Of a stretch of 64,000 bases of DNA, positions 10,701-40,352 are shown in pieces; within the stretch, counting starts at the first letter, position 1; each line of letters starts with the position of its first letter. Both the position numbers and the translations under genes were made by a program. The stretch lies in the NCBI GenBank assembly GCA_964057225.1, contig OZ059895.1:14322001-14386000 (forward strand). The letters run 5' to 3'. The notes beneath the pieces are model-generated. The model was not told the origin of the DNA and did not search any database. It worked only from the letters and a program-made list of their open reading frames with translations. This DNA comes from Auanema rhodensis (taxonomy: Eukaryota; Animalia; Nematoda).

Positions 10701-11408
10701 TTCTTCAACTTAAGAAGGGCACTAAATAGAATAACATAATTTTGTATTGATCCAAATTTAGTCTTACTTAGCTCTCTTAGCATATAAAACTGCAGATTGG
10801 GGATTGAGTTCGATAGCGGCAGTGAACTTTTGAACAGCCTCATCCAAATTGCCTGCAATATAAATCAAAAATATATAAAAGGAGCTTATTGCCAACCTTC
10901 ACTGAAGGCGGCCATGGCGGCATCGCGCAGTTCGCTGGCCTTTTCCATATCATCATCGGAAGGCTGAACGATAACAAATAAACATAGCTGTAAAAATTAT
11001 AAACTTACACTCTTGTTTTCATCTCCCATTGAAAGTGGTACACTGTCATCAGATTCAATAACACCAGAGTTATCAAGTTCAGGGTATGGAATCTCAGGTT
11101 CTTCCTCCTAAAGAAAGGGAAAGTACTTTGACCTATAATTATTCAATAATACTTCTTCAGAAGCAGCTTGAGTGGTTTCAGGTTCTGGCTTAGGCTTTTC
11201 GGGCTCAGACATAGGGCATTTCTTCTCTTTCTTAGGTGGGAGAGTAGCTCCAAGACTAAAACCAGTTTTCCAGAAAAAAAAATAAAATTCATTGTTTTTA
11301 CCTGACAAGATAATCTGCGAAAAACTTCAGCTTAGGTTCGTGTAACATATCGGGATTCTGCTGAAGTCCCATGACAAAGCCTTTAAGCAACTCGAAATGT
11401 TGTTCCAT
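4732..11408 (-). CDS. hip-1: Hsp70-interacting protein HIP/ST13 (N-terminal dimerisation domain, TPRs, GGMP-like region, STI1/DP domain); multi-exon with a 5.1-kb intron at 5339-10466
   Basis: ATG at 11408: [35 protein letters not shown]|[12 protein letters not shown] region [36 protein letters not shown]. The frame continues across the large intron as WLKEVEPN|[18 protein letters not shown]...[10 protein letters not shown]...LKDPE|[18 protein letters not shown]...VPEPDLD*, with the stop at 4734-4732. Confidence 0.93.
6197..10348 (+). CDS. Secreted, highly charged protein with ten CKYRKSCY-type repeats; nested antisense inside the hip-1 intron
   Basis: ATG at 6197 encodes a signal-peptide-like [21 protein letters not shown] followed by a donor. 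Further exons lie near 7085, 7347 and 7517. A long exon at about 7693-9978 contains the 720-aa ORF, followed by a 43-nt intron at 9979-10021. The last exons end [13 protein letters not shown] at 10348. There are nine exact CKYRKSCY motifs plus one CKYRLDCY. Confidence 0.88.
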
Positions 11409-11416
11409 TTCTGCAA
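11409..11416 (-). promoter_or_regulatory. Probable trans-splice acceptor immediately upstream of the hip-1 ATG
   Basis: The minus strand reads TTGCAG-AA-ATG. The same arrangement precedes bas-1 (TTCTAG + 7 nt), dpy-18 (TTTAG + 8 nt) and the gene at 35406 (TTCTAG + 6 nt). Confidence 0.6.
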
Positions 11417-12385
11417 TTTCTAAACCATTAATAAAAAATTAGAAAAATATTAATAAACTATATAAAATAAATAAATAGGAAAGAAATTATTAAAATAAAT
11501 TGCAAACGAAATGGAAATAAAATTTTCCTTTGCAATAAAGTACATTTACCAATTCCAAAACATGAAAATACAATAAAGATGGGTGGAATAAATAGTTTTT
11601 TATACAAGATTTGGCGCCAAGGCGCGAAATTTTTAAAGTATACAAGTATTCATACTAATACAAAACATAAGCAGATAAGATCAAGGACATAGATTAAGAA
11701 ACAGAAAAAAATTAAACATAGAAAGGATAGAGAACGTAGACACAATTGAGGTTTAACATCTTATAATATTTGGAAATAGCATCACTTTCTATATACGATT
11801 TGGTAACCAGATTGACAACGTTTTTATTAAATAAAATTTTAATGAAGTACGAAAAATGAAAATTTAGAAAAACTAACTTTCTTGAAAACTAAGTCATCCA
11901 AATGATTATTATTTTTTGGAAATAACATATGTATATCCCCCTAACGCAGTATTGCGTATTTAAAATTTAAAATAATCAAAAGTGATGAATGATCGAAAAA
12001 TTACATCTAAAACACCTGACAACTTCGTGTCAATGTTGTCTTGTATTAAAAAGTATTAAAGAAAGGAAAAATTGTGAGAAAATATCAAAATGATTAAATA
12101 TAATATTATGTGACTAAAATGGTTTTTTCGAATCATAATCAAACAATGAGAAAAAACACGTGCCAATTTGTCACCAATTAAAAACACGTATCTACATTAG
12201 ACACCGTAGGTCATGTATGAGCCTGAGCAACAGAAATCTTAGATTTGTGAACAACTCTGAATGTAGCCTGAATACAACCGTTCATCTCGCCCAGAAGTTT
12301 TAAAATGAACATCTTCCTCCTTAGGCACCAACTTTCAATTTTAAAAATCCAAAGAACTTGATTCATCCAATGATTTTCGATTCAT

Positions 12386-12480
12386 GTTGCTCTCCAGTGG
12401 AGAGCGTTCCAAAATTTAATTCGAACACAGAATGTTTCTGGTTGAATCAGGAAAGTACCTCAAACTTGGGTAATTAAACC
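12386..12480 (-). ncRNA. sls-1: Solo SL1 RNA gene (intact RNA, promoter truncated within the PSE; possibly silent)
   Basis: Leader at 12480-12459 with a perfect body. Homology to the repeat unit runs from about 12333 to 12532 and stops inside the PSE-like block. Confidence 0.9.
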
Positions 12481-14239
12481 AATGAAGCAGTGTCACCTCC
12501 CAGTGGCATCAATGCACGTGTCGTATCGCATATGTTTTGAAAGACTTTTGAACTGTTTTAGAAAGACAGAGAGAAAGAGATCGAAAGCTTCAGAAAGATT
12601 TTGTTCTTTCAAAAACATTTTTCATGAATTATTAAAGAAATTAGTATTTTTTCCGTCAAGTAATAGAAATTTTAGATTAGATTGATACGACGGATATGCA
12701 TAGTGATGTCAACGGTTGATGAAAGATCATCTTGTCCTTCATCTTCTTTATTCTATCTTCTTTTTCGTCTTCTAGTATTTATCTGTTTCCGATAGCCATG
12801 ATATGTATGTTTGCTTTGTTATTTTCCTAATAAAATTTTGAAAATATCATGAAAATTTCTTGAAAATATTACAGAACATCCTTATCTTTCATATGCGATG
12901 ACTATAAATCTTCAGAGATAATTATCAAATTTTATTGTTAGAGTTTGAATAAACTATCCAAAACAAGATTTCTGATAAGATTTTGGCAAAATTCAGAATA
13001 AATCGTATATAATTCATCATTAAGTTTCAAATTCAAGCTTCTGCGTTGTGCCGAATCTCTGCAGCTTCTCATCTCCACCTTGTGCTCGTTGCCTTTCTCA
13101 ATCTCCGTTCTTGCTCTTTTCTCTCTATCCTACTCTTCTTCCCGAATTATCTCTCACACCGTTCGTCTTCCTCCACCCTCTAACCCATTGCTCCTGATTC
13201 ATCGTCTGCATCTACTGCACTAGTGCGGCTTCATCTCCCATCTCTTATTTCTCTGTGGCTTGTGTCCATCTCTGTTACAACACTCAATGTCCGTCTGTCC
13301 ATCCTCTATATTCCATTCCAATACAACAAACCAAGTCACCAACTAACAATCGACTGACTGACCGAAAAGACATAATACGGGCATCATCTTCATCATTCGC
13401 ATCACAGTCATCGTCTACTAACACCATCTATCAGTCACCACCACATCGTCATTATCCTGGAGATGTCTGTCAGGTTTTCGTCGTCGATAGTGGTCTTGAC
13501 GTCTTCGCTTATTCCATCTTCTGCTCTCAGCTTCTTCTCTTTCTTTGTGCTGTCTCCCTCGTCGTCTTCTTGATCCACTGTTTTTGCTACTTCGCTTTCA
13601 CTTGTTTCGTTGGGCTTCTCATCCTCAGATACAGACTCAATCGTACAGTAAGACATAAGGCTAACACGAGAGATTGTAGACAACTAGAGAAGATACAAAG
13701 TGTGCTGAACAACACAACGATAGGCAGAGAAGGTCAACGCTCCACCACAAGGCTCTCTCGTCGTTCACCGACAACCGTCTTCTTATTCCTTTCTCGTGTC
13801 TTCCTCATACTCTCTGCTTTCTATCATACTACCATCACATCTTCCCTCCTTTCCTCGCTGTTTTCCCCGAAGCATCATCGCTGTAGGGGTCACTCACATA
13901 CATACATATACACAGAGACTATCTGCAAATGAAGAAACAAAGACTAGAGAGAAACTTCTTTCTTTTCCCCGCCACCTCGTGTCTTCCACCCCCCCCCCCC
14001 TCCCTCTCCTTTCTCTTTCCCTCTCCCTCTTTCCGTTTTCTCTCTTAGTTCTAGTCTTATACACATGTACATTCAGAGCTCAACTGTTTCATATAATTCA
14101 ATCGATCTTCTCATTTTGAATTTACCTCTGTTTTCAATTCCATAGATGACTTTTGCAACAAAATCTTACAGCTACATCATCGTAATTTCTGGTCAACCTG
14201 TGTATCTCTAGTTCGCATCCTGTCCACCCTCCCCCAACT

Positions 14240-16308
14240 CCCCCTCTCTCTCTCTCTTTCTCTCTCTCTCTTTCTCGTTCTCTCTCATAAATCAAATCAT
14301 CTGTTTTATTTAGAAGAAGGAAAACCAAATAATATTCACTTATCTTCAGAAGTTTTGTTGTCGATGTTAGACGTTCATTACCTGTTATGGTCTTGGTTCT
14401 TAGGCTCGTTTCTTCATGTGATTGAAAGTCTTCTGTTGATCGCCGTTAAAGTCATCTAACACACACACATACACACAGTCAACGCCTGTTTTCTCATTGA
14501 CCACCCAACAACATCTTCCTACATACGCAGTTCGTTTAGTTGATCTTCTGTAACTGTTTCGCATAAAATCATTCAAATATCTCTGTCCCTCTCTTCATGA
14601 TTCTCTCACAAACCCCTCTCTCTCTCTGTATCTTATTCTCATTGTCTCTCTTTCTCTTATACTATACTCCCCTCTTATCAGATTTTTCATTTATGATTCA
14701 AATCAATTCACACATCTTATCCTTCTTTTAATATTTTTCGGAAGCTTCTCTCCCTTCTTGTTGCTTCCTCACCTCTCTCCTCGAGTACACAATACTATCA
14801 TCTTACACACCTGTTCCAATTGCACTTGTATTTCCAAAGTCAATTTTCTGTTTCAATTAGCTAAGATTCATTCTTTATTCTTCTTTCTACTTTTACTTTG
14901 TTCTTTTAATTTCGATTTCCAAGTCGTTTATCTTCCAAGTTTTTCAAATTATTTTCATTTAAAAAAAAACGAAACTTTACTCTCTTCTTCATTTCTAAAT
15001 ACAAACAATTTTAATTTTTCATTCATTTCGTCAACTTTTCTTTTGAATATTCTTCATTGACGTCGTCGTCGTCGTCGTCCTCCTCCTCCTCCTCGTTCTT
15101 CTTCTTCTTCTTCATCATCATTGTCTTCTTCTTCTTCTCTTCTTCTATTTTTTCTTTTCAAAACCTCCATTAGATAATCCAATTTCGATACGTTTTTTCG
15201 CACTCCGTCCTGGGAATATGCTGTTTTATTGTTAAGATTTCAAATAAGATATGAAGAATGCTTATACTTCTTCTCATTCTTTCCAAATCTCTCTCTCTCT
15301 CTCTCTCTTTCTTTTTTATTACAATCAGATGTTTTTCCTTTTTAATCTCATACTAGTTCATCAACATCATTAGCGTCTTCTTGTCAACCTGATTTACAAT
15401 AAAAATAATTTTTTTCCGCGAAAAAAAAAACTTTTCTCTTGCAATGTTGAAAAGATGAAAAATGCATTTTCTAATCTCTTTTCAAGGCAACTATGTATTT
15501 GTTTATATTTGCTTTTTCACTAGCTTTGCTTTCAAATAATCCGTAAGATGATGATGATGATGTTCATCTTCATGATTCTTGCTATTTCCGTAGTTACAGG
15601 ACAATCTATATGGTCAAAAATTTATTTTTATTTAGAAAGAATCATACAATCTCTCTGTGTCCCTCCCTCTCTCTCTCTCCCTCCCTCCCTCCCTCTCTCT
15701 CTATATTTATATATATATTTATCTTAACTATGCTAATCTATTACTTGTATATATTATATAGTTTTTTAAACTTATTTTCTTGTAATCATGATTAATTTGA
15801 TCTAATGAGAATCATTGTGATATAATTAAATATGATCAGTTAATTATTTCTTATACAAGTTTTTCGTATAGTTAACAAGCTTAATAGTAACTTTTGATAA
15901 TCTCTAGCGGCTCATTCCTTTTGATAAAAAGAGTTTCAACATTGATATCACGATAGATTGATGGTAATAGATTGGGATGTAGAAAGACAAAGACGAGATA
16001 AAGAGGGAATGAATGAGATTTCAGATATAGTGTCTTCATCTTCTATCATTGATAGAAAAGAGAGAGTAAGAAAGAAAGAGAGAGAGAGAGAAAGTGAGGG
16101 AAAGAGGGAAAGAGAGAGAGAGTACAGGTACTGCAAGAGATACGATGATGCCAGAGGAAATTAGCTTCTCCTACTTCTTCTTTTCATCTCAAAGAGCCAA
16201 TAATCAATGGTGGTCGATCACCTGCTCATCTTCTTCTCCTTGTGTCTGATCAGAAGCTCAGAGCGAAAATGAGTAAGATATTAAGTCTCACTCTCTCTCT
16301 CTCTCTCA

Positions 16309-16377
<69 letters not shown>

Positions 16378-17076
16378 ACCCTCCCACAACAACAATTCAT
16401 AGTTTTTCTAAGATTTTTATCATTTTTTTTGTTTAAAAATATAAAAAAAAGCAAAATCTTAGATAAAGATCATATCAAATGCTGTGTTTCTTATCTTTTT
16501 TTTCTTCTTTCGCATATTTCTATGAATGTATTTCGTTGATTTGATGAGAAAATAGTAAACGAAGTTGTAAAATTCCTCAGCATTAGTTCATCCAATTTTC
16601 AACTTGGTAAAGCTTGTTATACTTTTCTCCTCTTTTCGTTCATTCACTAGTTCATTTGAATTTCTTATGAACAAATTTTTTATTCAATAAGAATGTTTCA
16701 ATTCATATCTCTCTCTCTCCCTCTCTCCTTCCCTCTCTTACATCTCTCCTCTCTCTCTCTCTTTATTTCCTTTTTTCATTATCCATGTGTGTATGTCTTC
16801 CTTTTCAACAAACAAAAAAATAGAATTATTGATTGATATTGATTGATTATAATTTGATTAAAAATCTTTTTTCTTCTATAAATACTAAATCTTTATATGA
16901 TCTTGTATGTATTTCCTTCGTTTGTCCTGTGTTATTTCCATCACAGCTGGGCGTCCTCCATCCCCCTTCATACTCAGAGTCGCCATTTCGTCTCTACTCC
17001 TCCTCATCTCACTCCTCCTTTCTAACCCTTTCAAATCTCGTCTTTACCCCATTCCCCTTTTACTTTCTCCCTCCCA

Positions 17077-17111
<35 letters not shown>

Positions 17112-19170
17112 CTTCTCTTAATATCTCTCTCGTATTGTTAGTTCTTGTTTCAAACTACTTTTAACTTAATCTTACTCAATTTTCAACATCATGTCCTTTT
17201 GCCAAATTTTTTTAACGCAGCCGAACAAGAGAAAAGAAAAAAAAAAACTTTCTATTTCCAGGTAAGATGTAATTGAATTCGAAGCACAGCAACCGTTCAA
17301 TTAAGTTTCTACTTCGATGAATCAAAGCATATAACTTCGATTATACGTGTCATCCAATTCAATATATTAACTAACTATATATTTATAATTTAAGTTAATA
17401 CTTTCACTTTTACTTATTCGTTCATATTTTCATCTTTTCTATTCTACTTTTCAACTTCAAATTTATATTTTTTGCTATTAAAATCATAAAATTCATCAGC
17501 TTTACATTACGTTTTATATTCTTTTGTTCACACAATATTCTTTTTATTTATTATTATTCTCATATTCTCAACTATTTCTCTCTCTCTCTCATGATTCCTC
17601 AAAGAATTTTTGTTAAAATTCTCCTTTTACTTTAATTTTTTTTCAAATTTGCAATCAATTTTCATTCACAAAAACCGTTTTCATACTTGTCTCAACTTGC
17701 GTATTCATCTCAGTTGTTACAGTCTCCTTATTACAGGCTAAATTGCTAGTTGACTACCAGCTGTCCGCTTGACTGTGGGCAAAGCTGTTGTATAGCTTCA
17801 GAAGCACAGAATGAGCTTCGGCTCATCATGGCTTGAATCGTCATACAGTCGATGGCGACTACACACAACACGACGTCTAATCAGTCATCTTCTAATCATA
17901 TTCAGTATAGCACACTTGGTTAAAGCATTAGTTAATGCTCCATATGCTATTGCTGCTCGTCAGGCTTTGCTGGCCATAGCAGCCATGATACTGCATGTCG
18001 TTTTATTAGTTAAAAAAGGTATGTATATAAATATAAATAGTTAATTATATATATATATATATATTACACATAATTAACTTCTTTTTTTTCAGATCGTCCT
18101 TTGTTATTGCAAATCAGTACAACTATTATATTATTATCTAGTTTCTTACTATTTCTACCAGATTATTCTTCTGTATTTCCAGCTTTAACTAATATTTTTA
18201 TTATTTATACATTTTTTACTTATCGATTTTTCATAAGTTTAACTATAAATGTATTTGTATCTATTACTCAAATCAGTGGTTTAGTATTATTTCATGATAC
18301 TCTTAGTACTAATGAGGTATGTTATCTTTTCATTTTCTTCTTTCAAATTTTCATTAAATTCAAATCTATTTTGCTTCAACCGTTTAATGCATAATTTAAA
18401 ATTAAAAATGATATTTTTCACGTCAAAATTTCACGTTAAATACGTCAAAACTTCACGTTGAATACGTGCTATTCAAATTCAAAGCTTTCTTCTGCTCCTT
18501 TTCTCCATACCACAAATTTTATTTTCAAGTAATTTGCTCATTTTTGTTTACAAAAAAATTAATTTATTTATAAAATTTCAAATATAATGAGTTTGAAAGT
18601 TAAAGTAAAAACGTGAAAGAAAAATTTTTGAGAATTTAACGATTGTTTTATCCATTTTGCCTTCATCATCGCCATCATCTGACAGCAGATGTCAGATTTT
18701 CTTTTATTGTTTAGTTTGAAGAGAATCGATACGAGAAAAAAAAATACAATACAACAATTCAAATTAGATAATAGTATAGTTATAACTCTATACTATACGT
18801 ATAGTTTAGAAGAAATAATTTAAAAGAAAATCAATAACCATATGTATTCAAGAAATTCTTCTTCAATTTTTTTTCTTTTTTTTTTCAGTTATTATCCATT
18901 ATACTTGTGCATTTATGGTGTCATTTCATATCAATTTATTTGAATTTACAAATTGATCGTCTATCACGATCATCATTCCTTAGCTCAAGAAATTCAATCG
19001 AAGCTGAGACTTTAGCTCTTAGTCAGTCTGATCGTTTGGTAAGTATATTTTGACCTTTGATTCATAGTAAAAGTTATAATCTTAAAGATGAAAAATGATA
19101 TAACCTTTAATCTCTTTCAAACATCTCTCTCTCTCTCTCTCTCCTTCTCTCTCTCTTTCTCTCTCTATTT
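14240..19170. repeat. (TC)n microsatellite-rich region upstream of and within the 5' end of the cyclase gene
   Basis: (TC)n at about 14244-14306, 15288-15307, 16287-16372, 16708-16762, 17077-17117 and 19124-19166. Confidence 0.88.
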
Positions 19171-22100
19171 CCCTCTGTTTATGAGATGTTTCGATCAAAA
19201 ATTCAGATATATCGTTAAATATTGTTAGATATGAGACAAACGAAAATTTTCCTTCTTCAAATCATCGGAGACATTGTCTTTTCTTCTTCTTCTTCTCTCC
19301 TTTTATGATTTTCAATAAATGACAGATCGTCTGTCTTTCGATTTTCAGAAAATTCAAATAACCTCATAGGAAAGCCGAACTCTCCGGGGATAGCTAGGCC
19401 AGTAGGAGAAGAGGACGAGAAAACGAGAAGACACTGGGCTTGGGGACGATGACCCAAAGAGTAAAGAGAGTGGACATCTGAAGAAGATGAAAGTAGAGTG
19501 GACAGGACGAAAAGGAAATGCAAAGCGAATACCCGAACAGATGACATGAATGAGAAAGATTCTCTTGACAAATCAAGAGAATCTATCTTTATCTATTTCC
19601 CTTCCTCTCTCACTCATCTGAAGTCCATTCCTCTTGTATGTCAAGTAAAATGGAAAGAGAAGACAATTTGAGTTAAATCACATATGATTCTCCAATTTCA
19701 AAATAGTATTTGAATGCTACAACCCATAAAACATTCTCAGAAGAGTGGAGCAAAGAGAGAAAGAGAGAGAGAGAGAAAGAGAGAGATAAGAGAGAGAGTG
19801 AGAGATCTATGTAAACTATACTAATTATAAGAAAAGCTAAGATCGTCTACCTTTATCATATATTATTTAACAACCAGGCTTTAAGTTGGTTTGTAGTATG
19901 TGATGCCATCCATAATTTGTCTTTTTTCGTTATCCAGGTTATATCAATTTCATCTTTAATAATCTAAAATTAAATATATTATATATTCTATTAATTATAA
20001 TTAATATAATTAATTTTTAGACAAGACTTTTACAAACTTTTTTACCAACTCATCTTATTAATCGAGCTCGTCATCAAATAACCTTATATAGTCCACATAT
20101 TTATACAGAATACTATTCACAGGTAGATTATATATTTTAAAATAAAATAAATAAAAATAATTATTATTATAGGTTACTGTAGCTTATGCCCGTTTAATTG
20201 GATTTGAAGCTGTTCTTGCTCAGTGTTCATCTTCTGATGCAGCACGTGTTCTTAAAGAATTTGATGTTCGTATTAATCGATTAGCAGCATGTTATGGATG
20301 TACCAGAATCATCTCAGAAGGTAAATCTTTTACATCAAAATTGAATACTAATCGTATAATATTGATTAATATAGGAATAACTGTTGTATCTTCAATACCG
20401 AATAAGATAGCAGATCATGCTGTTAAAGTTTGTCAATTTGCACTTGACCTCGAAGCTTTAATCAGGTAACTAACTGCAACTTAACGGTAAAAAAAACTCA
20501 AAATTAAACGATTTCTAGATCATTTCGTGAATCAACAACAGCTAATGTTACCTTATCAATTGGTATTGATAGTGGAAGCTTAACAGCAGGAATTGTAGGC
20601 AATTCCAAATGGCATTATGATGTTATTGGACAAACAATTGATAATTGTATTTTACTTCAAAGTAATACTCCAACTAGGTAATATCTCAAAATACATCTCA
20701 TAATCTCTATAAAATTCTAAATTTTTGATTTAACAATCTTCAATATTCAATCTTCAATTTTAAAAACCATTTCAGTGGTGTATATGTAACAGATGAAACA
20801 TACCAACTAGTTGGAAATAGTTTTGAATTTCAACGTATTGGAGAATTTTGGAAAATTACTTCGAAACAGAATGGAATGGAAGTTTTTCCAATTAATAAAA
20901 GGTTTTTCTTTCTTTATTTTTTCTAAAAAATTTCATATTTCTAAATAGATTTTCATTGGTTACTGTACCACAAGCTATAAATCGTTTATTACAAACAATG
21001 TCATCAACAATGAAAGTTACAAATACAACGAAGAAAAGGTAAAAATTTCTTTTTTTTTTGCCAAAAAATTTTGTTTTTTTCAGACAACAACCAACTGTAG
21101 ATGATCAACTTAATGATATTAATTCAAGTTCTACAAGTTCTAAGAATAGCTTTATGAATGTTGTTGATCTTAGTTTTCGAAATCAGAAAATGGAAGAAGA
21201 GGTAATACACACTGATCCTAGATATGAGTTAGGACAGCATCGCATATGATATACACTGAGCTGTGATCTTTCAAGCATTACGTTCATAATTCAAGTTTTA
21301 AACATCTGAAACTATTCGTGTAGATTGTGTGCAATGTGTAGTGAATGCTTACAGCATGTTCCAACTTGATTTTGAAACTTAAAATAATTTTTGTTTTCAG
21401 TATCATAAGGAGATGGATCACTGGTTTATACCAGCTATAACTATATCAATATTCTTTTTAGTTATATATGGTATATATCATATGCTTGTTATGCCAAGGT
21501 ATATTTTGAATTTTTCAAATAAAATTTGAGAAAATAATTTTTCAGATTAGTTATAAGTTTATTGGTTATAATCATTGCTTTAACTATAATGTTTTCTGTA
21601 TTACTTATGCTATATATCAATTTTTTCCACGTAAGTCACGTAAATATTTTAAAAAAAAAAGTTCAAACAAAATAAATTTAGAGCTTTACACAATTTATAA
21701 CAAGAACACCTTCTGGTCATACAATAACTGTAATTATTATTCTTTTAATATTATTATTATGTGGAATAGTTAATACGGTAAATTTCATATAATTAATATA
21801 ATTAGTAATATATTCTTCTTCTTCTATTTATAGTTTTCTTGTCCGCAATATAGTATTGTTGAAGAACAAACATCTAATTCGTCTAGTGTTTGTCGATCAA
21901 TTCACTTTGCTTCATTCTCGTTCCTTCTGTGGATTCTGACAGCAACCGTATTTCTTCGATTCTCATCATTGTACTTGCTGCTCCTACTGTTCGTCTCTGT
22001 GCTTGTCTACAGTAGCCAGATTGGCTTCAATCATCCACCAATTGGACCACAAACGTGAGTCAGTTGAAACATGAGCAATAACATTTGCAGCTTCAAAATT

Positions 22101-25100
22101 GAAATTTGAACTGAAAAAAAAAATTAATGCGAAAATCATTGTTTATATCTTTCGTTACAATATCATTTTGTTACGATCGTTTTTGAACTATCATCAATTC
22201 ATCTGTCGAAATCATTTGACAGCATTTTTACACAGCCGGAGGCAAAACAATTGGAAAGTAGAGTTGTAAACAGAGTGCAAAGCGATGTTCAAACTATATG
22301 AAATTTATTTGAGAAAAAAGTGTATAATGAAAGAGAGAAAGAGGAAGAAAAGTAAAGAGAGAGAGGGGGGGGAGAGAGGGAGAGAGAGATTAAGAGGAAA
22401 AGATCAAACGAGAAGGTAATTAATAGAAAAAGAGAGAAAAAGAAATAATTTATTGAGAATTGTCAAAAAGTTGAGACCACTGGCCAAGCCGACTGTTGCG
22501 TTATGTTACGTTAAAATGCCCATTAAATAAGATTTGTGAAAGACTTATTGCGCAAAGATGCCTGAGGGAACATAGAAAAATCTAAATTTATTTTATTATT
22601 TTCAGATTTGTTGTTGAATTCGATATATTATCATCGTTGGTTTATATCATATTAGTTATATTTGTGCGTGCTAGATTCTGTGAATTGTTGATGCGATTGG
22701 ATTTCTTAGCTGTTATAAAGGTACGTCAAACGTGAATTATCTAACTATATGTATAATATGCTAATTATTTTTAATGAAAAAGACCTTTATTTTTATTTTT
22801 TACACTGTCGTAAGCGGTTGCATATGCATTAATGTGCGATGAAAGTCGGACACCTCTATCTTAGAGGCCTCAGAAAACCCCCATTTTTTCCGAATTTTTG
22901 TAGTTTGTTTGAGAAGATATAAGGATTTCTAGTGAGCGTCCGGCTTTCATCGCACAAGGCTGTAGGTACAGCAGCTGAGCATCTCATCCCTCACTCTCCC
23001 ATCCCCCAAACCCCTAAAATTCATACAAATTGCAAGAAAAATAATTTGTTTATTTTATAGGGAGTTGAAGAAACAGCAAGCAAAGATCAATTATCATTAT
23101 TGAATAGTCAAATTCTATTGAATTTGGTTCCTCCACATGTAGCACCATGGATAGCAATGAAAGGAAATGAATCATGGCATCATGCTCATCATTCAGTTGG
23201 TGTAGCTTACATGGCTGTGTCTGGCTTTGATCTTGAAGGCGAAGATGGTCTGAATGCTTTGAATTTCGTCTTTTCACATTTCGATCAGGTACATTACATA
23301 GTTAAGAACTAATTATATAAATATTATAATTTGAAGGCTTTAACCAAATATAAAGGAATTGAAAAAATCAAAAATGCTAATAGATTCTATACGGTAGCTG
23401 TTGGAATGTTGCCAGATGTATCGCAAAACGTAAATAATTTGTTTTCTTGTTGTTGTAAATATGAATATGTGTTATAGGTTAATGAAACACCATGGACAAT
23501 AGGAGAATTATTGAATACATTAGCTCAATACCTACTTCATATAACTCAATTTGCTTGTGATCATGATTTTCATGTTCAAATAGGTACTGTAATCAGATTG
23601 AATTGATGAGTTATTGATCCATCTCATTATCATCTAGGTATTGACTGTGGAAGTACATTGACGATGGTATCGGATACAGAATATCCACGATACGAGCTGT
23701 GGGGTGATACAGTAGAGAGAGCTAGACGCTTAATGCAATCAGCAAGTCATAATCGTATATTGGTATCTGAAGAAATCTACTTAGCATTACGACCACGTGA
23801 TTTGGAATTCAGCTCTCAGCCATCGAAGGTACTTGTAATTCGTATAAAGAATCTGTATCATATACAATATGCTTACGTTTAGATTGATAATAATCTGAAT
23901 GCTTATGTGCTATACTGTAGAGGACATGGAGCTGCTGATGAAGAAACAATAGCAATGACGTCATCACTAATGATGCCAAAAGAAGAACAAGAACGTCACA
24001 CAAAGCAGATGTTTGAAACAGCAATTAATCAAGAAGAGGTAAGACATAATAGATTCAGTGAGAATTATTGGATGTATGTTCTAGCTTCCCTCATCTATGG
24101 CTTCATCCTTCTCATCAGAATTACAATCAATTGATGGAGATGTTGAAACTGATAGTGATCTCGAATGGATAACGCCTGAAACAGCATTGATGCAAGAAAA
24201 GAAACGACAATACTATGAAGACAAACAAGGAAAAGCTGGTGAATGCTCCATATCTCGTGAACGTGATCCAGAATCATCTTCTGTTCAATTGGAATGTCAA
24301 TCAGTTCATCGACGTGGATCATCATCATCATCATTCAGACGACGATACTACTGGGAAACTGATTATGATCCATACAAGTACGTGATATCAATGTTATAAC
24401 TTTAATATCAATTTATCGTTTCAGAGTTCCGGTTAAGCCTGTCAGACCTTCAGAGCCATATTATGCTCAACCATATAAAGCGGAACAAGCAATTCAGTAT
24501 TCTGATTGGTCTGAACAAGAAAATAGTCGAGCTGGCAGTCGAACAAGCAATTATCGAAGTAATTTTTTTCTGCTGAAGAAATAAAATTCAAAACTTTGTT
24601 CAGATCATCGTCGATGGAAAAGATCAGCATCAAAGAGTTCTATAAGAAGTGCTTTAAGTTGGCTACGAAAGGTAACTTTGGCTTATTTCAACTGAAACAT
24701 TCGTAACTTATAGGATTCAAATCTGGATGTTAGTGATTCATCTCAATGGGATGCTAAACAACGGCTTGATGCTGCATCATCTCGTGTAGACAAGATGCTT
24801 CAAGAGCTGAATGCCTATGGAGAATATGCTGATATTAAGCCAATTGTCTATCGGCCATTCCCAACAAATTTTTCGGGAACAGTTGGATCAATCAAATCAC
24901 TACATCGAGCATTATCATCGGCTTGTCATACGGAATATGATAATGATGAGTCTGATGTTGCATTATCAGATATTGAATGTAATAACATTGGAGCAACTGA
25001 TGATGTAACACAACATCCAACAAATAGATCAATCCCGTAAGCTTTTTCTTTATTAAAACTTGAATTAATCAAGCTATATGTTTGTACAGTTTGAAGAAGC

Positions 25101-25444
25101 ATCGCATTCCGAAATGGCGTCGAGATGGCACTGATGCTGATGCTGAATCACAGTGCAGCAGTCGAGCAAGTAGCATTGATGTGAGAGGACAGAGGTACAA
25201 CGCATAGTATCAAGTTTATACCTCAAGTTTTATATTTTGTAGATGGAAATCAGTTCATTCAGTTGGATATGATAATGAATATGAGATTGTTAGCTCATCA
25301 GAAGATGAAGCTGGAGATCATGGAGTATCAGATGAACGTCCATTACGTCTACTAGCAAGAGATGAAATGTGTGCCTTATCACGAGATATTCGAGCTAATT
25401 TCGGTGAATTCCAATTGGCAACATTTGATGATATCGATAACTAA
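17811..25444 (+). CDS. acy-3: Atypical transmembrane adenylyl cyclase-like protein (TM-C1-TM-C2 plus long tail), acy-3-like; many exons
   Basis: ATG at 17811 (MSFGSSWLESSYSRWRLH), then hydrophobic exons. C1-like domain: LLQTFLPTHL...VTVAYARLIGFE...SIGIDSGSLTAGIVGNSKWHYDVIG...GVYVTDET. A second TM cluster follows, then the C2-like domain: ILLNLVPPHVA...GIEKIK...IGIDCG...PRYELWGDTVERARRLM...ILVSEE. It ends FQLATFDDIDN* at 25442-25444. The family is secure; the acy-3 paralogue name is from recollection. Confidence 0.8.
22833..22964. mobile_element. Small MITE-like element with terminal inverted repeats in a cyclase intron
   Basis: TGTGCGATGAAAGTCGGAC (22833-22851) and GTCCGGCTTTCATCGCACA (22938-22956) are 18/19 reverse complements. 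The right end continues AGGCTG-TA, resembling a Tc1/mariner TA-CAG terminus. The left end appears eroded. Confidence 0.55.
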
Positions 25445-25841
25445 ATTGATTTCTTTTATTATTATTAATATTTTACCATATATAGTATATAGTATATAAT
25501 TATAATTTCTTTTTCTGTTCTCATTTAGATATTTGGACTCATGTGATCTTCGGTTTAACATCAAAAACGGGTTTTTTTGCCTTTTTGTTCAAAATAATTT
25601 CATTTTTTTTAAAAACTTCTTTTATATCCTCAGTTGCACCAAATACTATCTTGCCATTCATCATTATAAACGGTATTTTCTGTTTTAATATTCCTTGTAA
25701 CAAGGTATTTGTCTTGAATAAAACTTTATTATTATTATTAATAATAACATTCTTAAATATTAATATCATTAATACACAAAAACAAATTAAAGAGAATTAA
25801 ATGTTAATTAAAAGGTTTTTCATTCATCACACAACATCATC

Positions 25842-28425
25842 TTATGAAGAATTTTGAAGTTTTAAATGAATTTCTTTGATTGTTTCATAAGCAGTTTTGA
25901 TATCACTTGCTTCAGTCAATTGACTACAAACAGCTAATCTTAGGAAGAATGAGCCGTGAACCTAAAAATAAAAATTTGAATTTAAAAAATTTGAATATTG
26001 AGAAAATAAACCTTGGATGGAACTAAATGTATACGACGATCATCATTAATAGCATTACAAAGTTTTTCATTTTCTTCATTAGAACTCTGAAAAAAAATAT
26101 TTTTTATTATTTTAAATTCAAAAAATATTAGAATTAATGTAAATTATAATATACATTTTTAATTCTGAAACAGACGAGTCCTAAATGTTGTGGAACAAAT
26201 AGTTCAAACAAATCATCTGTTTTGATATATTCAGCAAACTGAGCAGCTAGATGATTTTGCTGTAACAGTTAAGTTTCATTTATGGGCATAATGTGATGTT
26301 GTAACCTTCTTAAGAATATTCTGAATTGCTTCAACTCCTAAATTTCTTAGAACAAACCAAATCTTCAAGGATCGGAAACGACGACCTAACGCTACTTGAA
26401 GATGCTGAAAATCATTTTTCAAAAAAAGATAGGGATGAACGATGAAAAGGCTTACGCGGTAATCGGAAGCTACAGCCTGATGTTCATGCTTAAGATAGAT
26501 AGGATCGACATTGAAATAGCTGGCAGCCTTAATTCCATCGGCAAACCTGAAGTAATAATCGTATTCAGTTTTTGTTTCTAAACATCATCAAACTAACCAC
26601 ATGGGAGAGCAATCAAAGTTTACAAACATTCCTTTATGGGCATTGAAGTTAAAGGAATCGCAAAAACGAATACCCGTTGATAAGTAGCGGAATTCGCGGC
26701 AAAGAAGGAAAGATCCTGAATTATGCTTTACTCTCGATTACAAGCGAACAAATTTACCAGCATAAGCTGCATCACAATGAAGCCAAATATGCTCACGTTG
26801 ACATATGGGACCGAGCTCTTCCAAATGATCGTATGAGCATGAGTTGGTTGTTCCCATAGTAGCAATCATAAGGAAAGGAATTAAGCCACGATTAACATCT
26901 GCCTTAATCATTACACCATTAAGATAAGTTCTAAGTTTTTAAGAACCAATCATACTAGAGATGTTAGTTATCTGACAAACCTTAATAGCTGCTTCGAAAT
27001 CAGTTGGAGTTACGGTATAATTGCCATTCTCATCTCTAGTTGATTTCAGCTTTCTCAGCCGAATTCCACTAAGCATAGCTCCTTTCTCAACAGATGAATG
27101 AGCCTATAAGACAGTGTTATTCCAAATCATTTGAAAGTTCTTACTTGATCAGAGCAATAAGCTACAAGCTTCTCAAACACAGTTGGATCATGATAATGTG
27201 GAACAAGCACCTCACTATCTTTATCTTCAATCTATTTGAATAAATTTGAGATCATCATTGCTTGTTTCCAAACACTTACAGTATTCTGACGTACTTTAGC
27301 TAAAAGATTTTTAACTGTTTTTCCAACTTCTGTAGCTGCAAGTCGTCCAAGAAAGCCGCTTGATTCACTGGTTTTCACATTCTAAATCATTGCCAGCTTA
27401 ATCTCAATGAAATTAAGACCACAAATTGCACCTCAACAGCTCTAGCTCTAGCTGACATGATAGCAATCAGAGTTGCATCACTAGCTGTACTCTGAATAAT
27501 TCCGCAACCAGGTCCTTCAGCCGAATTCTATATGAAGAAAAGAAAAATTCGTCTTCTATTTGTCTTCAGGAAATGAGAAAAAAACCTTAAAATGTTCCGG
27601 CAGACCCATTACATCAACTAGCCAATCTAATGATGCCATTTCCAATTCGGTCATTGATGGACATGATTTCTAAGAAGATTCAAATTCATTTTTTGGAATA
27701 AATATACATAAATGAATGAATTTCATGAAAAGACAGTACAACACACACCCATGTAAATCCAATAGCTGATATGCCACCACTAAGTATATCAGCCATAATC
27801 GCTTGATAACTGCAAGCTGTTGGGAAGTATGCATAGAAATTTGGATGATGCCAATTAGTAACTCCTGTAAATATTTTGAATAATAAGATATATGTATATT
27901 GATTTTTAGTGTTATTGATTGATTTTTAAATTGTTTTTCATGTTATCGCATCTGAATACGTAACGTCTATGTTCACATGCATCTGAATACGTAACGTCTA
28001 TGTTCACATGCATCTGAATACGTAGTAAACTCTACGTGAACTATCACATGAACTTTCATACTATTTTAAAATATTTTTATCTTATCGAACGATTGATTAT
28101 CATATCAAATCATTGAGTGTTTTGTTTGGAATACATTCAAGAAGTATTGATAAGATTAAAGGAAAAGTTACCTTTCATGACAACTTCTTCCAAATCGCCG
28201 AAAATTGTTTGCCAATCTTCTGGTGTTTGAGGTGCATGACTAGGTATCTTAATGATTATATATAGTTAATATAGTTTAAATAGAAATCTTTTATAAAATT
28301 ACCAAATCAGATATATATCCTGGTTTGATGTCAGGTAATGGTTGACGATCACGTATAGTTGACCAGTAATTGGCAACAAAATCAACCATTTCTTTTCCGT
28401 GTTTTCGAAACTCTTCTGGATCCAT
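25842..28425 (-). CDS. bas-1: Aromatic L-amino acid (DOPA/5-HTP) decarboxylase, PLP-dependent group II; multi-exon
   Basis: ATG at 28425: [21 protein letters not shown]...PLPDIKPGY...[13 protein letters not shown]...GFTW|[10 protein letters not shown]...[13 protein letters not shown]...YCSDQ|AHSSVEK...HCDAAYA|G...SFNFNAHK (PLP lysine)...FFLRLAVCS...LQNSS*, with the stop at 25844-25842. The [10 protein letters not shown] block and the insert before HDPTVFE are bas-1-like. Confidence 0.92.
27948..28024. repeat. 31-bp tandem repeat, about 2.5 copies, in a bas-1 intron
   Basis: GCATCTGAATACGTAACGTCTATGTTCACAT at 27948 and 27979, with a partial copy at 28010. Confidence 0.9.
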
Positions 28426-29045
28426 ATTGATTCTAGAATAAATATAAAATTAAATATAATAAAACTAAACTATATTCATATAGTTATATCTTGAAATTTT
28501 AAGAGGGAAGAAGAAAAGAGAAGGGATTGAAGAAAGTATAGATTAGGAGGGAGCTGCAATGGTGAATGGAGGGATATGGAGAGATGGAGAGCAGGAACCT
28601 GTGATGCAATTCGTTACAAAGCTTTAATGATCCGTATATGAATGTTCTCAATTGTTTAAAACATACATATACATATATTTCTTATGAAATAAATTATTTT
28701 GTGAAAGAAAATAGCGGATGTTGTCAATCTTTTGGAATAGATTTTACAAAGAAATAGTAAATAAGGCAACGATCATGGCTAGCAAAAGCATAGGAAATAA
28801 GACATTAAATGGAAAATCATTAAAGAAATATATACATATCTATATGTATATATAGTGAGTATAAACCATATAATCTAATCAATATACTTTAAAAAATATA
28901 TTTAATTTAATGAAAAATTGAGATAGAAAGGAAGAAAATGATGAAGAATGTTATCAGAAACAATTTATTATCATCAGGATCTTGTAGTCATTTATAGGAA
29001 GGACACACTTAGACAACACATTTGGACTGCAAAAATTAAATTTAT

Positions 29046-29047
<2 letters not shown>

Positions 29048-29112
<65 letters not shown>

Positions 29113-29433
29113 CAAGAGAGAGAAATAAAAAAAATCTTGAGATGTACTCATAGTTATAGATGAATTCTGAAAAAGAGTTTATGGAATAATTGACATGGTT
29201 CTTCACAAATTTCAAAGATGTGTCATGTTGTGTCAAATAAAACTAGAAATGATCTCGAATCTTACAAGTATTTGAAAGAAAATATAAAGATGAATATTAA
29301 ATTGAATCAATAAATAAAGAAAATATAATTGGCTTATATACGAATTTAAAATTTAGAATTAATGAAAAGCAAATAAGGAACCTAGTACACTTCTAAGACA
29401 TAGTTAGGTAGATGATGAAGAAAGTGGGAAAGC

Positions 29434-29508
<75 letters not shown>
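29048..29508. repeat. Two long (GA)n microsatellites upstream of bas-1
   Basis: Pure or near-pure (GA)n at about 29048-29110 and 29434-29508. Confidence 0.95.
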
Positions 29509-29511
<3 letters not shown>

Positions 29512-30156
29512 AAACTGTTGAAAGAGAAGAAGGAATGATTCCTTTAGTGCAAATGCAGATTTTATTCTTTCCTTCTGTTTATAGTTTAGAATTAACGATT
29601 ACAAGATATGATGATTGATGTATGAAATGTAGAAAAGCTAGCCCATTCATGAGCTCAGCCGCTGCAACAATACGATATCTTCTATAAATAATCTCAAGTT
29701 TTCTATAAGAATTAATTGTTTCTGCAATCTTGAACTCTAAATGAAATAGACGATAGTGATAGCCTTTGGATTCGGGGTCAACGTATATCAAAGCGCGTTC
29801 CTTTCATGTGCTTACCTTCAAGTCCTCCATATATTAGGAAATGAGTGAAAGAAGAAAACTATCCATGTACATATTATTATTTACTTTTTCATCTCAAAAA
29901 TATGTCTTGACCGGACAAGTGAACAACATACTCTTGAACTCAACTCAAGTATTGTATCACATAGACGTGTTGTATCTCTCCCCCCAACATGGCATAGACC
30001 GTCTCTCTTGATTAGACACCGTGGGTCCTGCACACGCGTAGACTACATCGAACTTGGCTCATCTCAACTATAATTCCCAGAATGATTATCATCTTCGTTG
30101 ATATTTCAATTTTAAAAATCCAAAGGACTTGATTCTTCCAATGATTTTCGATTCAT

Positions 30157-30251
30157 GTTGCTCTCCAGTGGAGAGCGTTCCAAAATTTAATTCGAACACA
30201 GAATGTTTCTGGTTGAATCAGGAAAGTACCTCAAACTTGGGTAATTAAACC
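30157..30251 (-). ncRNA. sls-1: SL1 spliced-leader RNA
   Basis: Leader at 30251-30230, with donor, Sm site and hairpin. Confidence 0.96.
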
Positions 30252-30496
30252 GACGAAGCAGTATCACCTCCCAGTGGCATCAATGCACGTGTAGTATCAC
30301 AGAGACGTGTTGTATCTCTCTCCCCAACATGATAAAGACCGTCTCTCTTGACTTGACACCATGGGTCATACACACGTGTAGGCTACATCGAACTTGGCTC
30401 ATCTCAACTATAATTCCCGAAATGATTATCATCTTCGTTGATTTTTCATTTTTAAAAATCCAAAGAACTTGATTCATCTAAGGATTTTCGATTCAT

Positions 30497-30591
30497 GTTG
30501 CTCTCCAGTGGAGAGCGTTCCAAAATTTAATTCGAACACAGAATGTTTCTGGTTGAATCAGGAAAGTACCTCAAACTTGGGTAATTAAACC
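30497..30591 (-). ncRNA. sls-1: SL1 spliced-leader RNA
   Basis: Leader at 30591-30570, with donor, Sm site and hairpin. Confidence 0.96.
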
Positions 30592-30837
30592 GATGAAGCA
30601 GTGTCACCTCCCAGTGGCATCAATGCACGTGTCGTATCACATAGACGTGTTGTGTCTCTCCTCCCAACATGGTAAAGACCGTCTCTCTTGACTAGACACC
30701 ATGGGTCATACACACGTGTAGGCTACATCTGAACTTGGCTCATCTCAACTATAATTCCCGAAATGATTATCATCTTCGTTGATTTTTCATTTTTAAAAAT
30801 CCAAAGAACTTGATTCATCCAATGATTTTCGATTCAT

Positions 30838-30932
30838 GTTGCTCTCCAGTGGAGAGCGTTCCAAAATTTAATTCGAACACAGAATGTTTCTGGTTGAATC
30901 AGGAAAGTACCTCAAACTTGGGTAATTAAACC
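30838..30932 (-). ncRNA. sls-1: SL1 spliced-leader RNA
   Basis: Leader at 30932-30911, with donor, Sm site and hairpin. Confidence 0.96.
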
Positions 30933-31180
30933 GACGAAGCAGTGTCACCTCCCAGTGGCATCAATGCACGTGTCGTATCACATAGACGTGTTGTGTCTCT
31001 CCCCCCCCAACATGATAAAGACCGTCTCTCTTGACTTGACACCATGGGTCATACACACGTGTAGGCTACATCTGAACTTGGCTCATCGCAACTATAATTC
31101 CCAGAATGATTATCATCTTCGTTGATATTTCAATTTTAAAAATCCAAAGAACTTGATTCATCCAATGATTTTCGATTCAT

Positions 31181-31275
31181 GTTGCTCTCCAGTGGAGAGC
31201 GTTCCAAAATTTAATTCGAACACAGAATGTTTCTGGTTGAATCAGGAAAGTACCTCAAACTTGGGTAATTAAACC
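31181..31275 (-). ncRNA. sls-1: SL1 spliced-leader RNA
   Basis: Leader at 31275-31254, with donor, Sm site and hairpin. Confidence 0.96.
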
Positions 31276-31521
31276 GACGAAGCAGTGTCACCTCCCAGTG
31301 GCATCAATGCACGTGTCGTATCACATAGACGTGCTGTATCTCTCCCCCCAACATGGTATAGACCGTCTCTCTTGACTAGACACCATGGGTCATACACACG
31401 TGTAGGCTACATCTGAACTTGGCTCATCTCAACTATAATTCCCTGAATGATTATCATCTTCGTTGATTTTTCATTTTTAAAAATCCAAAGAACTTGATTC
31501 ATCTAAGGATTTTCGATTCAT

Positions 31522-31616
31522 GTTGCTCTCCAGTGGAGAGCGTTCCAAAATTTAATTCGAACACAGAATGTTTCTGGTTGAATCAGGAAAGTACCTCAAA
31601 CTTGGGTAATTAAACC
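31522..31616 (-). ncRNA. sls-1: SL1 spliced-leader RNA
   Basis: Leader at 31616-31595, with donor, Sm site and hairpin. Confidence 0.96.
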
Positions 31617-31862
31617 GATGAAGCAGTGTCACCTCCCAGTGGCATCAATGCACGTGTCGTATCACATAGACGTGCTGTATCTCTCCCCCCAACATGATAA
31701 AGACCGTCTCTCTTGACTAGACACCATGGGTCATACACACGTGTAGGCTACATCCGAACTTGGCTCATCTCAACTATAATTCCCGAAATGATTATCATCT
31801 TCGTTGATTTTTCAATTTTAAAAATCCAAAGAACTTGATTCATCCAATGATTTTCGATTCAT

Positions 31863-31957
31863 GTTGCTCTCCAGTGGAGAGCGTTCCAAAATTTAATTCG
31901 AACACAGAATGTTTCTGGTTGAATCAGGAAAGTACCTCAAACTTGGGTAATTAAACC
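31863..31957 (-). ncRNA. sls-1: SL1 spliced-leader RNA
   Basis: Leader at 31957-31936, with donor, Sm site and hairpin. Confidence 0.96.
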
Positions 31958-32203: not shown

Positions 32204-32298
32204 GTTGCTCTCCAGTGGAGAGCGTTCCAAAATTTAATTCGAACACAGAATGTTTCTGGTTGAATCAGGAAAGTACCTCAAACTTGGGTAATTAAACC
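32204..32298 (-). ncRNA. sls-1: SL1 spliced-leader RNA
   Basis: Leader at 32298-32277, with donor, Sm site and hairpin. Confidence 0.96.

Positions 32299-40320: not shown

Positions 40321-40352
<32 letters not shown>

What the first reader, a model, noticed from the sequence alone, without database searches (positions are those of the whole stretch)
12523..29963. Solo SL1 copy and the 11-copy array rejoin exactly across a 17.4-kb gene block bounded by a 10-bp direct repeat
Seen: the solo copy's homology ends at ...GCACGTGTC-GTATCGCATA (12523-12532), and the large array begins at GTATCACATA-GACGTGTTG (29954-29963). This is the same position within the repeat unit, with a 9/10 overlap. Deleting the intervening DNA (cyclase + bas-1) restores one complete SL1 unit. 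Inference: the array was split by insertion of a gene-bearing segment with a target-site-like duplication, or by microhomology-mediated rearrangement. No transposase is visible.
Basis: partly seen in the sequence, partly recalled or inferred. Interest (0 to 1): 0.8.

Follow-up and report, generated by a model that had tools for sequence, protein, structure and literature searches.

The report
SL1 gene array split around resident genes
A roundworm's tandem array of SL1 trans-splicing RNA genes lies in three pieces whose cut ends fit together, but the genes between the pieces are old residents of the site, so the SL1 DNA is the newcomer and not the 17.4-kb gene block.

Summary
The solo SL1 copy ends at 12532, which is unit position 74. 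The 11-gene array starts at 29954, unit position 65. The two decamers match 9/10, and an in-silico join gives a 340-bp unit that is 94.7% identical to the consensus. Contigs from three independent studies carry the right junction.

The main interpretation, that a gene-bearing segment was inserted into an array, is not supported. In Auanema sp. JU1783, the closest relative I could reach, the genes T12D8.9-like, cyclase, bas-1, gene X and GPCR are fully collinear with the window and have no SL1 DNA between them. Diploscapter pachys also has bas-1 next to gene X. Four-fold sites between the window and JU1783 are saturated (48% identity). The block has no terminal inverted repeats and no transposase domain, and its two flanking repeats differ in length (10 and 12 bp).

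So the SL1 DNA arrived in an old gene row. Why the edges fit remains unsettled. My best reading (0.42) is that one former array was taken apart locally at two promoter-proximal positions. The strong rival (0.30) is separate seeding with recurrent break positions, because both arrays' right edges fade at the same unit position (127-129).

An earlier first-reader note on this same window (s1-422538) records the 12-bp repeat pair. This is an unusual arrangement of known parts and of moderate interest.

The parts
3559..4505 (-). SL1 array A: 3 SL1 RNA genes. Left edge at about unit position 208; right edge fades at position 127-129.
   Evidence: TRF; leader matches at 3691, 4032 and 4379; blastn and nhmmer; edge alignment; no significant homology beyond the edge.
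4494..4505 (.). 12-mer CTACATTAGACA at the right edge of array A (unit positions 118-129).
   Evidence: This 12-mer occurs exactly twice in the window, at 4494 and 12192. Neither copy extends on either side.
4506..12191 (.). Resident block H: hip-1 (minus strand; exons about 4732-5356 and 10455-11411) with a nested T12D8.9-like gene (plus strand, 5925-10360; 720-aa ORF at 7852-10014).
   Evidence: tblastx to L002 and L001; protein hits; the same nesting in Ancylostoma ceylanicum L003 and in L002.
12192..12532 (-). Solo SL1 copy B, unit positions 118 through 341 to 74. The SL1 RNA gene is at 12386-12480. The right part (from 12337) is about 98.5% identical to the consensus. The left part is diverged and carries about 45 extra nt.
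   Evidence: Rfam RF00198, full-length match, 54 bits, E=9e-9, below the gathering score of 75; alignments.
12523..12532 (.). Decamer GTATCGCATA at the end of B's homology (unit positions 65-74, which is -43 to -52 from the SL1 start).
   Evidence: GTATC.CA is the longest invariant block of the upstream region across all copies (alignment A1).
12533..29953 (.). Resident block C. It holds a conserved upstream stretch (12996-14416), a class III cyclase gene (plus strand, 17806-25425) and bas-1 / aromatic amino-acid decarboxylase (minus strand, 25854-28425).
   Evidence: Collinear tblastx and nhmmer matches to JU1783 loci L001 and L004; PF00211; PF00282; no inverted terminal repeats or transposase domain.
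29940..29953 (.). Weak 9/14 similarity of the flank to unit positions 51-64. This is either homeology or a decayed part of the overlap.
   Evidence: Extension score 4, P=0.006; nhmmer starts at 29937; local alignment starts at 29940.
29954..29963 (.). Decamer GTATCACATA at the start of array C (unit positions 65-74).
   Evidence: The junction is bridged by an identical contig in 3 runs.
29954..33772 (-). SL1 array C: 11 SL1 RNA genes. The right edge fades at unit position 127-129.
   Evidence: TRF, 11.0 copies, 96% matches; leader matches; edge alignment.
35409..43035 (.). Resident right-hand neighbours: gene X (plus strand, 35409-37995; 356 aa in relatives) and a 7TM receptor gene (minus strand, 39255-43035).
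   Evidence: Collinear with JU1783 L004. Gene X is also next to bas-1 in Diploscapter L005.

Best explanation
Shown: the hip-1/T12D8.9, cyclase, bas-1, gene X, GPCR row is an old, conserved gene neighbourhood. The three SL1 clusters A, B and C sit in three consecutive intergenic gaps of it and are missing from the same gaps in the relatives. The 17.4 kb is therefore resident DNA, and the SL1 DNA is what arrived after the split from the Auanema sp. JU1783 lineage. Inferred: A, B and C are consecutive pieces of one former SL1 array that lay in or beside this locus. It was taken apart locally at two positions upstream of an SL1 gene. One is at -43/-52, inside the most conserved promoter block. 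The other is at -96/-107. Each break left a 10-12-bp duplication of array sequence, as a staggered break or a back-stepping polymerase would. The pieces ended up on opposite sides of the neighbouring gene blocks through a local swap or replication-based template switching between the array and the adjacent genes. No transposon and no gene block from elsewhere was involved. Since then the internal units have been kept alike by copying between units, while the outer edges drifted.
For: Synteny: window 5925-10360, 12996-14416, 17806-25425, 25854-28425, 35409-37995 and 39255-43035 are collinear with one JU1783 contig. The gap from the bas-1 start codon to gene X is 811 bp there and 6983 bp here. 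Diploscapter has the same bas-1/gene X pair. None of the six relatives' loci holds an SL1 leader or an SL1-like remnant. Four-fold sites are 48% identical. At that divergence a neutral 12/12 repeat older than the species split would be kept with a probability of about 1e-4, so the junctions are younger than the gene adjacency. One former array: two facing edge pairs fit in phase, 127-129 with 118-122 and 74 with 65. By simple arithmetic the chance for two pairs is about 0.8%. All 15 genes have the same orientation. The 12-mer pair shares two states that no other unit has, and B's left end aligns only with C1, its would-be neighbour. Each split spacer has matching divergence on its two halves: about 59% and about 56% identity to the consensus (gaps counted, including B's extra 45 nt) for the A-right and B-left halves, and 94% and 93% for the B-right and C1-left halves. 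There are no inverted terminal repeats, no shared block ends and no transposase domain.
Against: I found no simple one-step mechanism that yields both conserved gene order and array-side duplications. No second copy or remnant of either gene block lies in the flanks. Microhomology is absent at three of the four junctions. Array C's right edge fades at the same unit position (127-129) as array A's. A single split array does not predict this (about 1.5% by chance), and it points instead to a recurrent boundary. The A3/B spacer is far more diverged than any internal spacer. Only one relative at saturating distance could be compared for the left side.
Confidence: 0.42

Rival explanations
1. Separate seeding with recurrent break positions. 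SL1 array fragments, as linear or circular DNA released from the many arrays of this genome or as templated repair patches, were captured independently in the three gaps. Donor arrays tend to break at two promoter-proximal positions (65-74 and 118-129). Any right edge and any left edge made there then appear to rejoin.
For: Three edges fall at 118-129: A-right, C-right and B-left. Two fall at 65-74: B-right and C-left. The right edges of A and C have unrelated flanks. The closest match to A's diverged right edge is C's right edge; the reverse does not hold, since C's edge matches A1's upstream spacer and C's internal units better. GTATC.CA is the longest invariant upstream block, so a bound and accessible promoter site is plausible. 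The genome holds many small SL1 clusters among housekeeping genes (earlier notes). The unit spacer has about 160-270 times single-copy depth, and a B-like spacer variant occurs elsewhere. This reading fits the conserved gene order without any gene movement.
Against: It needs an unproven hot spot. The 65-74 position has only the two edges in question. It does not by itself explain why three seeds sit in adjacent gaps, share one orientation and have facing edges that match. Nor does it explain why the 12-mers share private variants. No locus-side target duplication flanks B or C. Array A has only a 6-nt TTGATT repeat, which I read off the sequence.
Confidence: 0.3
2. A cyclase plus bas-1 segment was inserted into a contiguous SL1 array with a target-site-like duplication. 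The event was old enough to be shared with the relatives, which later lost their SL1 DNA. The sharp junctions were preserved by copying between SL1 units.
For: A direct duplication of array sequence flanking a block is the classic sign of insertion into the array. JU1783 has lost the hip-1 exons next to where B would be, so it has had deletions there.
Against: It needs SL1 loss at the bas-1/gene X gap in both JU1783 and Diploscapter, with no remnants. It needs a 12/12 repeat in a non-homogenised spacer to persist across saturating divergence. The block has no inverted terminal repeats and no transposase domain, and the duplications are of unequal length.
Confidence: 0.07
3. Chance. The clusters are unrelated insertions or decayed copies, and their edges fall close in unit phase by coincidence.
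For: Edges of decayed repeats are hard to place. Flank tests have low power. I examined several boundaries after the fact.
Against: Two facing pairs within 30 nt have about a 0.8% chance. On top of that come the exact 12-mer with private variants and the 9/10 decamer at sharp homology ends.
Confidence: 0.1
4. Assembly artefact. One or both junctions are chimeric joins in a repeat-rich region.
For: Tandem arrays are error-prone. The depth suggests many more unit copies than are assembled here. Run X4 lacks a contig over 29456-29887. I did not lay reads on the left junction.
Against: The right junction is carried without differences by contigs of 3 runs from 3 studies. Nine runs hold 0.90-0.97 of the words across the left junction region. 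A chimeric join would not produce two complementary in-phase edges.
Confidence: 0.03

Closest known systems
C. elegans SL1 / 5S rDNA tandem cluster (established knowledge; the cluster is described in PMC11822377 and bioRxiv 10.64898/2026.01.07.698080)
   Same: Head-to-tail repeats, each holding one SL1 RNA gene with its own upstream promoter, kept alike by copying between units.
   Different: Here there is no 5S gene. The unit is only 341 bp. The array lies in three pieces separated by ordinary protein-coding genes.
Spread of tandem RNA-gene arrays (rDNA, 5S) to new sites by ectopic recombination or re-integration of extrachromosomal circles (review PMC10946416)
   Same: Tandem RNA-gene DNA appears at new chromosomal sites without a transposase.
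   Different: A re-integrated circle should have both of its own ends at one unit phase. Here the ends of each cluster differ (208/129, 118/74, 65/129), and it is the facing ends of neighbouring clusters that fit.
Target-site duplications of DNA transposons, for example Mutator-like elements with 9-11-bp duplications and captured host genes (from memory)
   Same: 10-12-bp direct repeats flank a gene-bearing block.
   Different: There are no inverted terminal repeats and no transposase. The two repeats differ in length. The block is resident by synteny with relatives.
Replication-based template switching (FoSTeS / MMBIR, chromoanasynthesis; from memory)
   Same: It can interleave two nearby templates in order and orientation, with small duplications where the polymerase returns and without any transposon signature.
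   Different: Microhomology is weak or absent at the junctions, and no extra copy of the gene blocks remains.
Site-specific retrotransposons of spliced-leader genes (NeSL-1, SLACS, CZAR; from memory)
   Same: SL RNA genes are a preferred place for breaks and insertions.
   Different: Those elements insert within the leader exon and encode reverse transcriptase. Here the breaks are in the promoter and no such ORF is present.

Membership tests
SL1 spliced-leader RNA gene (Rfam RF00198) | Canonical 22-nt leader GGTTTAATTACCCAAGTTTGAG followed by a GT splice donor | tested here: met
   15 exact matches, all on the minus strand. GGUA follows the leader in the Rfam alignment.
SL1 spliced-leader RNA gene (Rfam RF00198) | Full-length fit to the covariance model at the curated threshold (stem-loops plus Sm site AAUUUUGG) | tested here: inconclusive
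   Model positions 1-103 are matched, with the Sm site and terminal hairpin present. The score is 54 bits and E=9e-9, but the gathering score is 75.
Transposon-mediated insertion of the 17.4-kb block | Terminal inverted repeats or other defined element ends | tested here: not met
   The ends of blocks C and H were aligned to each other and across blocks. The best case had p about 0.04 and lay internally, not at the termini.
Transposon-mediated insertion of the 17.4-kb block | Transposase, integrase or reverse transcriptase gene | tested here: not met
   Ten ORFs of 74-720 aa were scanned against Pfam, eight of them in the block and two outside it. Only the cyclase domain was found. Small or split ORFs were not scanned.
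Transposon-mediated insertion of the 17.4-kb block | Block absent from the orthologous site in relatives (an empty site) | tested here: not met
   The relatives have the block in place and lack the SL1 DNA instead.
Transposon-mediated insertion of the 17.4-kb block | Target-site duplication of fixed length | tested here: not met
   The two flanking repeats are 10 bp (9/10) and 12 bp (12/12).
Re-integrated extrachromosomal circle of array units | Both ends of one insert fall at the same unit phase | tested here: not met
   A has 208/129, B has 118/74 and C has 65/129.
Replication-based template switching (MMBIR/FoSTeS) | Microhomology at breakpoint junctions | tested here: inconclusive
   There is 9/14 homeology at 29940-29953 (P=0.006) and nothing at the other three junctions.
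Replication-based template switching (MMBIR/FoSTeS) | Copy-number gain of the templated segments | tested here: not met
   No second copy or remnant of either gene block lies in the flanks inside the window. The rest of the genome could not be searched.

The most novel reading that the evidence does not exclude
Two fixed positions upstream of SL1 genes are preferred break or join points: one inside the invariant GTATC.CA promoter block at -43/-52, the other at -96/-107. SL1 array fragments would then act as a transposase-free mobile cassette with defined ends. Such cassettes would seed new SL1 clusters in the promoter gaps of ordinary genes and could leapfrog neighbouring genes.
Probability: 0.2. 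Interest if true: 0.65.

Novelty: new variant of a known kind. Interest (0 to 1): 0.4.

Why it matters
SL1 genes supply the leader for most nematode messenger RNAs, and little is known about how their arrays move and multiply. This locus gives a base-level view of an array in pieces around genes whose order can be shown to be ancestral. That makes it a natural experiment on how tandem RNA-gene arrays colonise a genome. If the break positions recur elsewhere, array fragility would be tied to the SL1 promoter complex. If they do not, the locus records a complex local rearrangement that preserved gene order. It is also a caution: a repeat that rejoins across a block does not show that the block was the thing inserted.

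Tried and rejected
- Rfam at gathering threshold found no SL1. At the E-value threshold it did.
- A word search with a 66-aa bas-1 exon found nothing because of the length window. I reached the JU1783 bas-1 by way of the representative search and a full-length strongylid protein.
- Exact look-ups failed for the ORF spanning the left junction, for a 39-aa ORF inside the unit, and for the Mesorhabditis spiculigera T12D8.9-like protein and the Necator bas-1 protein.
- Tests for decayed SL1 units in all six flanks were not significant (p 0.46-0.77). By eye, the left flank of B resembled a decayed unit, so I dropped that idea.
- Tests for homology between the right flanks of A and C, and for continuation of either into the unit, were negative.
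- A search for remnants of duplicated gene blocks was negative.
- A 50-nt similarity between the JU1783 bas-1/gene X gap and the reverse complement of the unit spacer (p about 0.02) found no support in Diploscapter or in the window flanks.
- I worked through tandem duplication plus deletion, inversion pairs, and crossover between arrays. None explains the array-side duplications together with the conserved gene order.
- Runs X10 and X11 looked like possible diverged relatives (share 0.27). Their shares vary between regions and they carry the same organism label as X7, so low coverage is more likely.
Full report
**What is in the sequence**

The window comes from a rhabditid nematode. The closest protein relative I could find is Auanema sp. 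JU1783, at 56% identity on a fast-evolving nested gene. The run organism labels are coded, so I cannot name the species.

The canonical 22-nt SL1 leader occurs 15 times, always on the minus strand:
- array A, 3559-4505: 3 genes;
- solo B, 12192-12532: 1 gene;
- array C, 29954-33772: 11 genes.

TRF gives a 341-bp unit, and C units are 95.6-100% identical to each other. Rfam's SL1 model matches solo B full length at 12386-12480, with the Sm site and hairpins present (54 bits, E=9e-9). That is below the curated threshold of 75 bits. There is no 5S gene.

**Check of the observation**

I number the unit from the C of CTCAAACTTGGG. On this numbering the SL1 start is position 22 and the decamer is 65-74.

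- blastn, nhmmer and a local alignment all stop B at 12532, position 74. There is no extension beyond it.
- Array C starts at 29954, position 65, by TRF and blastn.
- The decamers GTATCGCATA and GTATCACATA match 9/10.
- The in-silico join is 340 bp long and 94.7% identical to the consensus.
- nhmmer and the local alignment extend C by 14-17 nt to the left (9/14 matches). This is unlikely by chance (P=0.006), but it was one of several boundary tests.
- A 499-nt contig lies on 29519-29983 without any difference in three runs from three studies, so the right junction is in the reads. It reaches 30 nt into the array, which is what a 31-mer graph allows.
- I could lay reads only once, so the left junction rests on word shares of 0.90-0.97 in nine runs.

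**A second in-phase pair**

An earlier first-reader note on this same window (s1-422538) pointed to a 12-bp repeat, and I checked it. CTACATTAGACA occurs exactly twice, at 4494 and at 12192. The first copy is the end of array A's homology (positions 118-129). The second is the start of B's homology. Neither copy extends on either side. So both gene blocks, hip-1/T12D8.9 and cyclase/bas-1, are flanked by short direct repeats of SL1-unit sequence.

**The gene block is resident**

The nested T12D8.9-like ORF led to a JU1783 contig on which it is followed by a class III cyclase. I reached the JU1783 bas-1 protein in three steps. It lies on the same contig.

tblastx and nhmmer show full collinearity, in the same order and orientation:

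| Feature | Window coordinates |
|---|---|
| T12D8.9-like gene | 5925-10360 |
| 1.4-kb upstream stretch | 12996-14416 |
| cyclase | 17806-25425 |
| bas-1 | 25854-28425 |
| gene X | 35409-37995 |
| 7TM receptor | 39255-43035 |

The gap from the bas-1 start codon to gene X is 811 bp in JU1783. It is 6983 bp in the window, where it holds array C. Diploscapter pachys also has bas-1 and gene X as divergent neighbours about 2.1 kb apart. In Mesorhabditis belari, bas-1 has other neighbours.

None of the six loci from relatives holds an SL1 leader, even with four mismatches allowed, or any nhmmer match to the SL1 gene.

Four-fold degenerate sites between the window and JU1783 are 48% identical, a distance of about 0.9. 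The gene adjacency is therefore far older than any neutral 12/12 or 9/10 repeat could be.

The block has no terminal inverted repeats, and its ends do not resemble those of the other block. The ten ORFs I scanned against Pfam show no transposase domain.

**Why do the edges fit?**

Evidence that A, B and C are pieces of one array:
- Two facing edge pairs fit in phase. The chance is about (31/341)^2, or 0.8%.
- All genes share one orientation.
- The two 12-mers share states that no other unit has.
- B's left end aligns only with C1, its would-be neighbour.
- The two halves of each split spacer are equally diverged from the consensus: about 59% and about 56% identity with gaps counted for the A-right and B-left halves, and 94% and 93% for the B-right and C1-left halves.

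Evidence for a different view:
- The right edges of arrays A and C both fade at position 127-129, and their flanks are unrelated.
- The closest match to A's diverged right edge is C's right edge. The reverse does not hold: C's edge matches A1's upstream spacer better.
- Three edges therefore fall at 118-129 and two at 65-74. This suggests recurrent break positions.
- The decamer holds GTATC.CA, the longest invariant block of the upstream region even in the decayed edges. It is probably part of the proximal promoter element. That is my inference, not a tested result.
- Earlier notes of this scan report many other SL1 clusters among ordinary genes on this chromosome. I did not check them.
- The unit spacer has about 160-270 times single-copy depth, and a B-like spacer variant exists elsewhere in the genome.

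**Mechanism**

A direct duplication of array sequence around a block is what insertion into the array produces. Conserved gene order says the block never left. I could not derive both facts from one simple step.

- Tandem duplication plus deletion, inversion pairs, and crossover between arrays all fail to explain the phase match.
- The flanks hold no leftover copies of the gene blocks.
- What remains is one of three routes: a local swap of an array end-piece across the adjacent gene block; serial template switching between the array and the neighbouring genes, with a 10-12-nt back-step on each return; or independent capture of fragments cut at preferred promoter-proximal sites.

I put 0.42 on one former array taken apart locally. 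The other readings get 0.30 (separate seeding with recurrent breaks), 0.10 (chance), 0.07 (an old insertion of the gene block followed by loss of SL1 in the relatives) and 0.03 (artefact).

**Comparison with known systems and verdict**

The parts are known: 5S-free SL1 arrays, the spread of tandem RNA-gene DNA (PMC10946416), and copying between units that leaves the array edges decayed. What is unusual is the in-phase interleaving with genes whose order is demonstrably ancestral, and the break inside the promoter core. I rate it a new variant of a known kind, with interest 0.4.

**Limits**

- Only one relative, at saturating distance, covers the left side.
- I could not search the rest of this genome.
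- Bins 26144-27439 have no depth in X1 and X4 except 7.1 in one X1 bin, and almost none in X2. They overlie conserved bas-1 exons, where the reads tool filters, so this gap is not a finding.

Noticed in passing
L001 (Auanema sp. JU1783), whole 24 kb; compare window 4732-5356 and 10455-11411: The hip-1 exons that surround the nested T12D8.9-like gene in the window, in L002 and in Ancylostoma ceylanicum (L003) are absent around the JU1783 orthologue. That lineage has lost or moved hip-1 while keeping the nested gene.
   Followed up: partly
window 29456-29887: Run X4 has no contig here, although it has about 370x depth just to the left. Three other runs carry an identical 499-nt contig, and X4's word share for 27000-30200 is 0.78 against about 0.92. 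This may be a strain-level structural variant right next to the array edge.
   Followed up: no
window 7852-10014 (+): A 720-aa single-exon ORF with many copies of a CKYRKSCY motif and long acidic/lysine-rich runs has no Pfam match. Orthologues occur across nematodes, one named as T12D8.9 in Haemonchus. Its nesting inside hip-1 is old.
   Followed up: partly
window 12996-14416 and L001 14880-16281: A 1.4-kb stretch upstream of the cyclase still aligns at the DNA level with JU1783 (nhmmer E=3e-24), although four-fold sites are saturated. It may be a conserved 5' exon or a regulatory region.
   Followed up: no
window 29888-30290 (depth) and 30057 (loose end): The unit spacer has about 160-270 times single-copy depth, so the family is much larger than the 15 copies assembled here, or array C is collapsed. 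One contig carries a B-like spacer variant (TACAGCCTGAATACAACT) joined to C-type sequence, so B's odd left half belongs to a subfamily present elsewhere.
   Followed up: no
L004 reverse complement 12893-12943 and unit spacer (for example window 31416-31468, minus strand): About 79% similarity over 48 nt between the JU1783 bas-1/gene X gap and the reverse complement of the SL1 unit spacer (p about 0.02). There is no support from Diploscapter or from the window flanks, so it is probably chance.
   Followed up: yes
window 3559-3564 and 4506-4511: Array A begins with TTGATT, and the DNA right after its last 12-mer also begins with TTGATT. This 6-nt direct repeat around the whole cluster could be a locus-side duplication from the arrival of array A. 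I read it off the sequence and did not test it statistically.
   Followed up: no
window 59242-59362 (-): A tRNA gene matches Rfam (52 bits) over 121 nt, so it probably carries an intron.
   Followed up: no
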